Source: Pocillopora damicornis (taxonomy: Eukaryota). From it: DNA of 64,000 nt. The DNA lies in contig NW_020846595.1 of NCBI RefSeq assembly GCF_003704095.1, forward strand, positions 124,001 through 188,000. The letters are read 5' to 3'. This document shows positions 35,863-37,225 of the stretch, piece after piece. The notes under the pieces are model-generated. The model searched no databases. It saw nothing but the letters and a program-made list of their open reading frames with translations, and had not been told where the DNA came from. Position 1 is the stretch's first letter, and the number at the start of each line of letters is the position of its first letter. The position numbers and the translations under genes are program-made.

Positions 35863-37225
35863 ATGCTTTTTTTGGTGTGTCTTTTACTCTTTGAGGCATG
35901 CGCTGTGTCCATCAGTCCGATGATAAACCGCAATATGGAACGTGACTCCATTCGGGTAATATACAGCTGTGATGATCTCTCATAACGTGAAAACCGACGT
36001 CGAATAAGCGTTGTGTCCTGAACGTATTCGCCTTTCGCTGCTCATCAAACAGTGACTGTATTAAATCATATCCTTTCTATTCTCCAAGACAATACAGTCT
36101 CGGCTTACGTCAGAGTGGGATATTTTCCTGGTGACAAACTGGCTCCCTTCCTCACTTTAAAGCGGTGATTTGTTTTCTTATTTTCAGGATAATTCAGATC
36201 CAGAGAACCATGAGTCCTCCATGGTACAAGCACGATATGCACGAGGCAAGAATAAAACGTCCTAAGAACTTGTAAAGTTCACCTTTAAGTCTCTTGTCCA
36301 TAAATTATCCTACTTAAAAAACACACTGAATCGTAAAGCTCAGGAAACGGCAACATGATTATGTGTTATTATGGACGAAAAATATGTCCAGCGCAGCCTA
36401 ACTACTATTCTCTCGTAATTTTAGCGATGGCAACCTAATACAGATAGGTAAAAGTACGAATTTACGAATTCGCGCTTTAGGAACATTTTGAGCGGATGAC
36501 AGTAGTCGTCAACGTTCGTCCTTTGTCTATATTGCGATATTTACAACTTTTTTTTCACTTTTTCATCTTAAGACTGCACGTGATAACGATGGTCGCTTTT
36601 TCCTTTTGCCAGGGTTTAAAAATTGAATTGGAATTATGAGTGTCGCAATGACGATATCTGCCATAAAACTGTTAAATAAAGAGAAAGAAAATTGTGACCA
36701 GGGACAACAAAGGTTAAAGAAGAAAAAATCGTGTATAAAACAGATCGAAAATCTGTCGCGGTTTCGAAAAAGTTTTAGCCGTTGAATTTTGTGGAATTGA
36801 ATTTTTTAACCCTTTAATTCCCACGAGTGACCGAGACAGAATTTCTCCTCACAATATCGGTATAATACCCAGTGGACAAGTGATGAGAATAACCAAAAAT
36901 ATCAATTAGGGAATTATCAGTTGATCCAATACCAGATGATCTCCAAATTAAAGAGTCAAACAACACGGTTAGTGAATGTGCTTTCATCTTTGATGTCCAG
37001 TTCTCCAGGTTGTATTTTTCCAGAATCCGTAAAGCGTATATCACCACTGATCATTTTCATTTGTTGGTAAAATGAACAATGACGCATTAAGCTGTTTTGT
37101 TTTTCGTTGATCAAAATATTTCTTTCTTTTATTAATCAGAACCACAAACTCCTCCGCCGGTGTTTACAATCGAACCAACGGAGGATAGAACAGAACCATC
37201 CTTCCCATTTGCATTTCCTTTCTGA
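35863..37225 (+). CDS. Chimeric E/D mini-gene: signal peptide, propeptide (RYAR) and tail peptide only, 78 aa
   Basis: Exons 35863-35955 (MLFLVCLLLFEACAVSISPMINRNMERDSIR), 36188-36245 (DNSDPENHESSMVQARYAR; GC donor GAG|GCAAGA, phase 1) and 37140-37225 (EPQTPPPVFTIEPTEDRTEPSFPFAFPF*). The frame is open across all three exons; expression is unknown. Confidence 0.6.

What the first reader, a model, noticed from the sequence alone, without database searches (positions are those of the whole stretch)
35863..37225. New chimeric gene from a tandem duplication, predicted to secrete only the conserved tail peptide
Seen: the duplication breakpoint (about 36527/36528) joins intron 2 of an E-type gene to the last intron of a D-type gene. 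The exons splice in phase to give MLFLVCLLLFEACAVSISPMINRNMERDSIR-DNSDPENHESSMVQARYAR-EPQTPPPVFTIEPTEDRTEPSFPFAFPF*. All three coding indels relative to the parent exons keep frame (3 nt in the propeptide exon; -3 and +6 in the tail exon), whereas flanking non-coding DNA has many arbitrary indels. The RxxR site is retained. Inference: this is a VWC-less prepropeptide that would release a 28-aa peptide, possibly a decoy or competitor of the full-length family or an independent signalling peptide.
Basis: partly seen in the sequence, partly recalled or inferred. Interest (0 to 1): 0.88.

Follow-up and report, generated by a model that had tools for sequence, protein, structure and literature searches.

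The report
Expressed chimeric coral gene from duplication
In the coral Pocillopora damicornis an old tandem duplication fused the start of one secreted-protein gene to the tail of its neighbour; the fusion is transcribed and spliced as predicted, but other Pocillopora lineages have deleted parts of it, so it is a real young gene of unproven function.

Summary
Window 31911-36527 and 36529-41521 are tandem copies, about 88% identical in non-coding DNA. The junction at 36527/36528 puts copies of gene E's signal-peptide and propeptide exons in front of a copy of gene D's tail exon.

A poly(A) RNA contig carries the predicted joints 35955/36188 and 36245/37140 (a GC-AG intron inherited from E), plus a D-type 3'UTR intron. 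The 78-codon frame is intact here. In P. verrucosa it gives the same protein, with two synonymous changes.

- Every family intron after the first is phase 1, so the in-frame join is automatic.
- Two of the three in-frame indels lie in short repeats.
- A neutral simulation keeps the frame open about 10% of the time.

Exons are nevertheless much more conserved than introns between Pocillopora haplotypes.

Against an essential role, two Tara Pacific scaffolds lack exons 1-2, and a third has a truncated tail exon with no 3'UTR. RefSeq models and one low-depth RNA contig also join the 5' exons to E's body.

Verdict: a real, unannotated, lineage-restricted chimeric gene. Secretion of a 28-residue tail peptide is plausible but untested. 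This scan has no note of it on other DNA.

The parts
31911..36527 (+). Copy 1 of the tandem duplication: the end of D's second VWC exon, D's last intron, tail exon and 3'UTR, the intergenic DNA, and the copy of E's exon 1, intron 1, exon 2 and part of intron 2
   Evidence: Self-BLAST. Global alignment: 4451 aligned nt, 84.6% overall, 88-89% in well-aligned non-coding parts.
36529..41521 (+). Copy 2 of the tandem duplication: the copy of D's last intron, tail exon and 3'UTR, the intergenic DNA, and E's own exon 1, exon 2 and part of intron 2
35863..35955 (+). Chimera exon 1' (signal peptide and start of the propeptide, 31 codons, phase-0 GT donor), copied from E exon 1 at 40819-40911
   Evidence: RNA joint 35955/36188 in runs X15 and X18. 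93/93 identical in P. verrucosa and in Tara scaffold L018.
36188..36245 (+). Chimera exon 2' (propeptide ending in RYAR, phase 1, GC donor), copied from E exon 2 at 41165-41225
   Evidence: RNA joints on both sides in X15. It carries a 3-nt in-frame deletion shared with P. verrucosa and absent from L018 and from E.
36246..37139 (+). GC-AG chimeric intron. It contains the duplication junction 36527/36528 and a 330-bp insertion (36729-37058) with a high-copy ~145-bp repeat
   Evidence: (joint 36243->37138, free by 2 nt, which gives 36245/37140).
37140..37239 (+). Tail' exon. Coding sequence runs to 37225 (stop at 37223-37225), then 14 nt of 3'UTR. Copied from D's tail exon, which starts at 32194
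   Evidence: Two synonymous differences only in P. verrucosa.
37240..37594 (+). 3'UTR intron (GT-AG), homologous to D's 3'UTR intron at about 32299-32632
   Evidence: Joint 37237->37593 (cut +2) in X15. D's joint 32298->32632 in X18 and X19.
37595..37624 (+). Start of the last 3'UTR exon. Only 30 nt are seen in the spliced contig, and the 3' end is not mapped
   Evidence: side 30, and the depth of bin 37500-37699 fits 30 nt of the depth-64 contig.
40819..43307 (+). Parent gene E. Exons 40819-40911, 41165-41225, 41725-41949 (VWC1), 42263-42460 (VWC2) and 43186-43307 (tail)
   Evidence: Transcript-derived proteins P0044 and P0014, and RefSeq P. verrucosa P0047.
29914..32276 (+). Parent gene D, 3' two-thirds. 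Propeptide exon about 29914-29957, WSC-like exon about 30119-30424, VWC1 about 31126-31375, VWC2 31754-31918, tail coding sequence 32194-32276
   Evidence: RNA joint 31918/32194 in three runs. The P. verrucosa ortholog is 303 aa.

Best explanation
A 4.6-5 kb tandem duplication, older than the divergence of the Pocillopora lineages compared here, has one end in intron 2 of the two-VWC gene E. The other end is at the 3' edge of the second VWC exon of the neighbouring gene D. The duplication placed a copy of E's upstream region, signal-peptide exon and propeptide exon in front of a copy of D's last intron, tail exon and 3'UTR.

The junction gene is transcribed and spliced through a GT-AG intron, a GC-AG intron inherited from E, and D's 3'UTR intron. 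The result is a poly(A)+ mRNA with a 78-codon ORF that contains no VWC domain.

The likely course is entry into the ER through the E-type signal peptide, followed by cleavage by a furin-type convertase after RYAR. That would release a 28-residue Pro/Phe-rich peptide ending in ..FPF, the same free C-terminus as protein D.

Shown: the duplication, the junction, the spliced mRNA, the intact ORF here, and an ORF in P. verrucosa that encodes the same protein. Inferred: translation, secretion, cleavage and any activity.

The gene is lineage-restricted and dispensable, because other Pocillopora haplotypes have deleted its 5' exons or its 3' end.
For: - Duplication and junction.
- Spliced RNA: one X15 poly(A) contig (depth 64) has joints 35955/36188, 36245/37140 and 37239/37595. 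The bin depths fit exons of 93, 58, 100 and 30 nt.
- GC donor: parent E uses the same one.
- NMD: the stop lies 14 nt before the last exon junction, so nonsense-mediated decay is not expected.
- P. verrucosa locus L023: exon 1' 93/93, exon 2' 58/58, tail' with 2 synonymous and 0 non-synonymous changes, all splice sites kept. Surrounding non-coding DNA differs at 66/2215 sites.
- Tara scaffold L018: the chimera's exons differ at 1/222 sites, its introns at 58/1008 (Poisson P about 4e-5).
- The signal-peptide pattern and a basic site before the first VWC recur in relatives from other corals.
Against: - Only one contig in one run shows the exon 2'-tail' joint. It is an assembled contig, not raw reads, and the tool marks 'between: not known'. 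Three other RNA runs did not show the joint.
- No protein of 29-93 aa sharing words with exon 1' exists in a 5.8-billion-protein collection, so nobody has called this product.
- Neutral survival of the ORF has probability about 0.10.
- Haplotype H2 (L015 and L016, two samples) lacks window 35766-36975. Haplotype H3 (L018) lacks 37211-37859.
- Conservation of exons 1' and 2' could come from their use with E's body.
- Conservation of tail' alone is weak: 0 non-synonymous against 2 synonymous changes. The 170 nt of intron next to it are also nearly identical in L018.
Confidence: 0.5

Rival explanations
1. Transcribed by-product. The duplicated E promoter still fires and the copied splice sites still work, so a spliced poly(A) RNA is made. 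The short ORF, however, has no selected function and is decaying at different rates in different lineages.
For: - The in-frame join is automatic for a family with phase-1 introns.
- ORF survival by chance is about 0.10.
- Coding identity between the copies (92.6%) is only slightly above non-coding identity (about 88.5%), and half of that branch belongs to the functional parents.
- Two deletion haplotypes exist in congeners.
- No product has been annotated.
Against: - Exons are far more conserved than introns between haplotypes: 1/222 against 58/1008 in L018, and 0 non-synonymous changes in P. verrucosa.
- The one indel that can be placed on the chimera's own lineage is in frame.
- The RNA contig depth (64) is of the same order as that of gene D (96) in the same library, although contig depth is a poor measure.
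Confidence: 0.25
2. Alternative 5' module of gene E. The duplicated promoter and exons 1'/2' serve mainly as alternative first exons that splice on to E's VWC exons about 5.5 kb downstream and give a full-length E-type protein. The tail'-terminated mRNA is then a side product of early splicing and polyadenylation.
For: - A contig in run X18 carries the exon 1'/2' joint and then runs from 36243 into the first letters of E's VWC1 exon at 41725.
- The P. damicornis RefSeq model XP_027052432.1 (P0013) starts with exons 1' and 2' and continues with E's VWC1, VWC2 and tail.
- P. verrucosa isoform X2 (P0046) starts with exon 1' and continues with E's own exon 2.
- This reading would explain the conservation of exons 1' and 2'.
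Against: - The X18 contig has depth 2.4 and carries T where the window has A at 36244. It could therefore be an allele of E or a product of gene conversion.
- The two RefSeq models use different and odd junctions (extra residues GKNKT or GKSKR), not the GC-AG joint that transcripts show.
- All listed transcript-derived E proteins (15 of the 24 members of the cluster) carry E's own exons 1-2.
- The tail'-terminated form is the high-depth contig in X15.
Confidence: 0.2
3. Assembly artefact: two haplotypes of one locus laid in tandem.
For: None beyond the general risk in a fragmented 234-Mb draft assembly (PMC9646523).
Against: - The copies differ at about 11.5% of non-coding sites and by 58 indels.
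- The same junction stands in a P. verrucosa chromosome assembly and in Tara scaffold L018.
- A single Tara scaffold (L016) spans D, both intergenic copies and E.
- 14 runs (DNA or of unrecorded kind) from 5 studies hold 88-96% of the words.
Confidence: 0.01

Closest known systems
Chimeric genes formed by tandem duplications that span parts of two neighbouring genes (exon shuffling), as catalogued in Drosophila yakuba and D. simulans (Rogers, Shao and Thornton 2017, PMC5460883; also PMC4069613, PMC4503668)
   Same: The duplication ends lie in two adjacent genes. The junction joins the 5' end and promoter of the downstream gene to the 3' end of the upstream gene. The junction is transcribed. 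The structure varies in presence between related lineages.
   Different: This example is in a reef coral and is old: it is shared by P. damicornis, P. verrucosa and the Tara lineages. The product loses every folded domain of both parents and keeps only the signal peptide, the propeptide and a short tail.
The parent family: small secreted coral proteins with two VWC-type cysteine-rich domains (Pfam PF00093; precomputed PF23334 VWC2L_2nd on relatives), in the manner of VWC2/VWC2L (Brorin-type) proteins
   Same: The chimera shares the parents' signal peptide, their propeptide with a basic cleavage motif, and their Pro/Phe-rich tail.
   Different: The chimera has no VWC domain and so cannot be filed as a VWC protein. 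The coral family itself is narrow: only 11 representatives at E<=0.001 among 1.84 billion. Its link to VWC2L rests on weak profile hits only.
In-frame exon-skipped isoforms within the same array (gene F, RefSeq LOC113679673 isoforms X1 and X2; Stylophora pistillata LOC111336679 isoform X3)
   Same: These are products that lack one VWC exon yet stay in frame, because the exons are phase 1-1 symmetric.
   Different: Those are splice variants of one gene and keep one VWC domain. The chimera is a separate transcription unit fixed in DNA by the duplication, and it keeps none.

Membership tests
Chimeric gene born by tandem duplication | Two tandem copies whose ends lie inside two different genes | tested here: met
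   The ends lie at 31911 (the end of D's VWC2 exon) and 41521 (E's intron 2). The junction is at 36527/36528.
Chimeric gene born by tandem duplication | A transcript that crosses the junction and joins exons of both parents | tested here: met
   an X15 poly(A) contig has joints 35955/36188 and 36245/37140. This is one run and one contig, marked 'between: not known'.
Chimeric gene born by tandem duplication | An open reading frame running through parts of both parents | tested here: met
   (78 codons). P. verrucosa encodes the same protein.
Chimeric gene born by tandem duplication | The protein product is made | not testable with these tools
   No proteomic or ribosome-profiling data could be reached. 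No such protein exists in the searched collection.
VWC-domain protein (PF00093) | At least one VWC cysteine-rich domain in the product | tested here: not met
   The chimera's three coding exons hold a single cysteine after the signal peptide's hydrophobic core, and no VWC exon. The parents' exons hit PF00093: D VWC1 at 31.3 bits, above the cut-off; E VWC1 at 24.7 bits, below it.
Secreted propeptide precursor cleaved by a furin-type convertase | N-terminal signal peptide | tested here: inconclusive
   No predictor was available. By eye there is a hydrophobic core LFLVCLLLF followed by small residues at -3 and -1 (A-C-A). The same N-terminal pattern occurs in E orthologs and in relatives from Oculina and another coral.
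Secreted propeptide precursor cleaved by a furin-type convertase | R-x-x-R or dibasic motif at the propeptide boundary | tested here: met
   RYAR ends exon 2'. E has RDAR or RYAR, D has RYKR, and Oculina has RRAR.
Secreted propeptide precursor cleaved by a furin-type convertase | Cleavage and release of the peptide | not testable with these tools
   This needs expression and mass spectrometry.
Pseudogene or dead duplicate fragment | Disabling mutation (frameshift, stop, lost splice site, deletion) | tested here: not met
   None in P. damicornis or P. verrucosa. Other haplotypes do carry deletions: H2 lacks exons 1' and 2', and H3 has a truncated tail'.

The most novel reading that the evidence does not exclude
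The 28-residue Pro/Phe-rich peptide ending in ..FPF is a real secreted product. It would have been born when a duplication stripped both VWC domains from a two-VWC protein. Selection would maintain it in the P. damicornis and P. verrucosa haplotype, where it acts on whatever partner binds the family's conserved tail, as a competitor of the full-length proteins or as a signal in its own right. Other Pocillopora lineages have lost it. That would be a dated, polymorphic example of a peptide ligand or antagonist arising by domain loss in a reef coral.
Probability: 0.2. Interest if true: 0.7.

Novelty: new member of a known kind. Interest (0 to 1): 0.5.

Why it matters
Chimeric genes made by tandem duplication are a recognised source of new genes, but documented cases come mostly from flies, plants and mammals. 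This is a clean coral example:
- the breakpoints are known to the base;
- both parents still sit next to it;
- a spliced transcript has been seen;
- a second species encodes the same protein;
- related lineages carry natural knock-out haplotypes.

That combination makes the birth, retention or loss of a new secreted peptide directly testable in Pocillopora, a widely sampled reef-building genus.

It also corrects the public annotation. The RefSeq model of LOC113679671 borrows the chimera's first two exons instead of gene E's own, and the 78-codon product is not annotated at all.

Tried and rejected
1. Haplotypes assembled in tandem: rejected.
2. 'Exons splice in phase' as a sign of selection: rejected. 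Every family intron after intron 1 is phase 1.
3. Three in-frame indels as proof of selection: weakened.
   - The +6 duplicates a 6-nt unit of the FP-coding repeat, and the -3 lies in an AAC/ACA repeat.
   - Both are shared by all chimera copies and absent from all D copies, so no outgroup shows which lineage changed.
   - Only the 3-nt deletion in exon 2' can be placed on the chimera's lineage. Even that depends on L018 not having been converted by E.
4. ORF intactness as proof: a neutral simulation gives about 0.10. A first run had a boundary error and is discarded.
5. The search for homologous proteins with the stop-to-stop ORF around exon 1' (window 35824-35982): no candidate.
6. The look-up of encoding contigs for P0015 and P0016: not on record.
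7. Gene calls on the Tara scaffolds read through TGA and cannot be given by reference. I reached them through cluster members instead.
8. Paper search for Pocillopora plus 'VWC domain': no paper (one search was a malformed query).
9. The search of earlier findings by words: nothing.
10. Exons were joined only inside local scripts, to translate them and to run the simulation.
11. No complex or structure prediction was run, because I do not claim a binding partner.

Full report
**What the window is.** The window is eukaryotic DNA at about 37% GC. It is contig C3230, bases 124001-188000, of a 234.35-Mb assembly in 4393 contigs. Proteins encoded here are RefSeq entries of Pocillopora damicornis on a 521,129-bp contig. 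The 234-Mbp size matches the published P. damicornis draft (PMC9646523).

The + strand carries an array of small secreted-protein genes. Each has a signal-peptide exon and a short propeptide exon ending in a basic motif. In D a WSC-like exon follows. Then come two cysteine-rich VWC-type exons and a short Pro/Phe-rich tail exon. Tail exons lie near 32.2 kb (gene D), 37.1 kb (the finding), 43.2 kb (E), 50.0 kb (F) and 57.2 kb (G).

Pfam gives VWC hits for the cysteine-rich exons. D's VWC1 scores above the cut-off and the others fall below it. The subfamily is narrow, with only 11 representatives at E<=0.001 among 1.84 billion proteins.

**The observation.** Self-BLAST shows 35715-36527 matching 40695-41521. 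It also shows 36529-36728 and 37059-37998 matching 31911-33046, and the intergenic stretch between them is duplicated as well. The two tandem copies are therefore 31911-36527 and 36529-41521.

The right end of the duplication lies in E's intron 2. The left end lies in the last ~9 nt of D's second VWC exon, which ends at 31918, rather than inside the intron proper.

The three exons 35863-35955, 36188-36245 and 37140-37225 give a 78-codon frame. The donor of exon 2' is GC. Parent E has the same GC donor, and transcript-derived E proteins that read ..AR|EPKRC.. show E uses it.

A global alignment of the copies has 4451 aligned positions and 58 indels. Well-aligned non-coding parts are 88-89% identical, and the three coding exons are 89.2%, 94.8% and 95.0% identical. 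The chimeric intron holds a 330-bp insertion whose ~145-bp core has at least 40 copies in the genome.

**Is it expressed?** 14 runs (DNA or of unrecorded kind) from 5 studies hold 88-96% of the words of 35700-37700, and 6 RNA runs hold 13-41%. I laid contigs of four RNA runs from four studies on 31700-37699.

- Run X15 (poly(A) metatranscriptome) has one contig of depth 64 with three joints:
  - 35954->36187 (GT..AG, cut +1);
  - 36243->37138, free by 2 nt, which gives 36245/37140 with GC..AG ends;
  - 37237->37593 (GT..AG, cut +2).
- The third joint is the counterpart of D's own 3'UTR intron, which X18 and X19 show at 32298->32632.
- The bin depths fit a contig covering 35863-35955, 36188-36245, 37140-37239 and 37595-37624.
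- D's last coding joint (31917->32193) appears in three runs and serves as a positive control.
- The stop codon lies 14 nt before the last exon junction, so nonsense-mediated decay is not expected.

The caveats are real. These are assembled contigs, not reads. The tool marks these joints 'between: not known'. Only one run shows the exon 2'-tail' joint. The 5' end is not resolved.

**A second use of the 5' exons?** Run X18 has a contig of depth 2.4 that carries the exon 1'/2' joint. After 36243 it runs on into letters identical to the start of E's VWC1 exon at 41725. It has T where the window has A at 36244.

The P. damicornis RefSeq model XP_027052432.1 (P0013) also starts with exons 1' and 2'. 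It reads 5 codons past the GC donor (GKNKT) and then continues with E's VWC1, VWC2 and tail. P. verrucosa isoform X2 (P0046) starts with exon 1' and continues with E's own exon 2.

The listed transcript-derived E proteins (15 of the 24 members of that cluster) all carry E's own exons 1-2. Read-through or alternative-first-exon forms are therefore possible but weakly supported.

**Other Pocillopora genomes.**
- *P. verrucosa* (chromosome assembly, locus L023) is collinear from D to F and has the whole chimera. Exon 1' is 93/93 identical and exon 2' is 58/58, including the 3-nt deletion. Tail' has two differences, both synonymous. All splice sites are kept. The surrounding non-coding DNA differs at 66 of 2215 sites.
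- *Tara Pacific scaffolds L015 and L016* (two samples) run from window 35765, through 21 nt that resemble E's upstream sequence, straight to 36976. This 1.2-kb deletion removes exons 1' and 2' and the junction. The tail' copy stays open with one non-synonymous change.
- *Scaffold L018* keeps the junction. Its exon 1' is 93/93 identical. Its exon 2' has one difference and lacks the 3-nt deletion. It jumps from 37210 to 37860, which replaces the last five codons and removes the 3'UTR.
- *Scaffolds L017 and L019* both start exactly at 37860. That is consistent with a branch in the assembly graph at that point.

- The in-phase join is no evidence, because all introns after intron 1 are phase 1 in D, E and the chimera. 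The family also has in-frame exon-skipped isoforms.
- Indels occur in the coding exons as often as elsewhere: 3 in 237 nt, against 1 per 77 nt overall. Only 10 of 51 small non-coding indels are multiples of three.
- The +6 duplicates a 6-nt repeat unit and the -3 lies in a 3-nt repeat. Neither can be assigned to the chimera or to D.
- A neutral simulation at the observed non-coding rates keeps the start codon, frame and splice sites intact in about 10% of trials.

Comparison between haplotypes is more telling.
- Against L018 the chimera's exons differ at 1 of 222 sites and its introns at 58 of 1008 (Poisson P about 4e-5).
- Exon 1' is unchanged inside a 5' module that differs by 7% overall, while E's 5' module differs by under 2% between the same genomes.
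- Against P. verrucosa there are 0 non-synonymous and 2 synonymous changes.

Exons 1' and 2' are therefore constrained. For tail' alone the signal is weak: 0/71 in L018, where the neighbouring 170 nt of intron are also almost identical, and 2 synonymous changes in P. verrucosa.

**Reading.** The most likely account is a real, old, lineage-restricted chimeric gene. Its mRNA encodes a signal peptide, a propeptide ending in RYAR, and a 28-residue tail ending in ..FPF.

A basic motif just before the first VWC exon is common in the family: RDAR or RYAR in E, RYKR in D, RRAR in an Oculina relative. In gene G the motif RKKR directly follows FPFPFPF. Cleavage there would expose the same kind of C-terminus that D and the chimera have naturally. 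In the parents the tail is fused to VWC2 with no basic site before it, so a free tail would be a new molecular species.

Translation, secretion, cleavage and activity are all inferred. The rivals are a transcribed by-product and an alternative 5' module of gene E. They remain open, and junction-read counts or long-read cDNA would separate them.

**Comparison with what is known.** The mechanism of origin is the one catalogued for Drosophila tandem duplications that create chimeric genes by exon shuffling (PMC5460883). The product cannot be filed as a VWC protein because it has no VWC domain. I found no protein record for it and no paper linking Pocillopora to VWC domains.

Only single exons and contiguous ORFs were searched, by reference.

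Noticed in passing
window 35863-36263 and 40819-41225: The RefSeq model XP_027052432.1 (LOC113679671) takes the chimera's exons 1' and 2', plus five read-through codons, as the 5' end of gene E. Transcript-derived proteins (P0044, P0014) use E's own exons at 40819-40911 and 41165-41225 with a GC-AG intron. The public model therefore looks mis-joined.
   Followed up: partly
window 36802-36951 (inside 36729-37058): A ~145-bp repeat with at least 40 copies at 84-88% identity across the genome. 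RNA contig depth over it reaches 155-1667 in the four RNA runs laid. It is probably a SINE- or MITE-like element and was already present before the Pocillopora haplotypes split.
   Followed up: partly
window 40248-40590: A 343-bp stretch about 230 bp upstream of E's exon 1. It is present here and largely in P. verrucosa but absent from all six Tara scaffolds (L015-L020) that cover the site. It is an insertion/deletion polymorphism in E's presumed promoter region.
   Followed up: partly
window 35422-35714: A 293-bp stretch upstream of exon 1' has no counterpart upstream of E's exon 1. The two promoter-proximal regions are therefore no longer homologous between about 150 and 450 bp upstream.
   Followed up: no
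window 40819-43307 (gene E) versus 31126-32276 (gene D): Between P. damicornis and Tara scaffold L016, E's exons differ about as much as its introns (13/577 against 47/1778). D's exons are almost invariant (1/501 against 15/653 in introns). E may be evolving fast or under relaxed constraint.
   Followed up: partly
window ~47-50 kb (gene F); proteins P0041, P0042, P0015: RefSeq isoforms of gene F in P. damicornis, and of its Stylophora pistillata ortholog, skip the first VWC exon in frame. A transcript-derived protein (P0003) includes it.
   Followed up: no
window 30119-30424: Gene D has an extra exon with a weak WSC-domain hit (E 0.008). A 504-aa relative (P0007) combines a WSC-like N-terminus with four or more VWC domains.
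   Followed up: no
window 57150-57299: In gene G the tail motif FPFPFPF is followed directly by RKKR and 16 more residues.
   Followed up: partly
window 43747-44119; 19209-19471; 21839-22069: Short tandem duplications: units of about 186 bp, 86 bp and 108 bp at 87-94% identity. The first lies just downstream of gene E and is conserved in the Tara and P. verrucosa loci.
   Followed up: no
loci L010-L022 (Tara Pacific metagenome scaffolds): The gene calls stored for these coral scaffolds read through TGA and are prokaryote-style calls across introns. Their 'proteins' (for example P0001 and P0029) are mixtures of exon and intron.
   Followed up: yes
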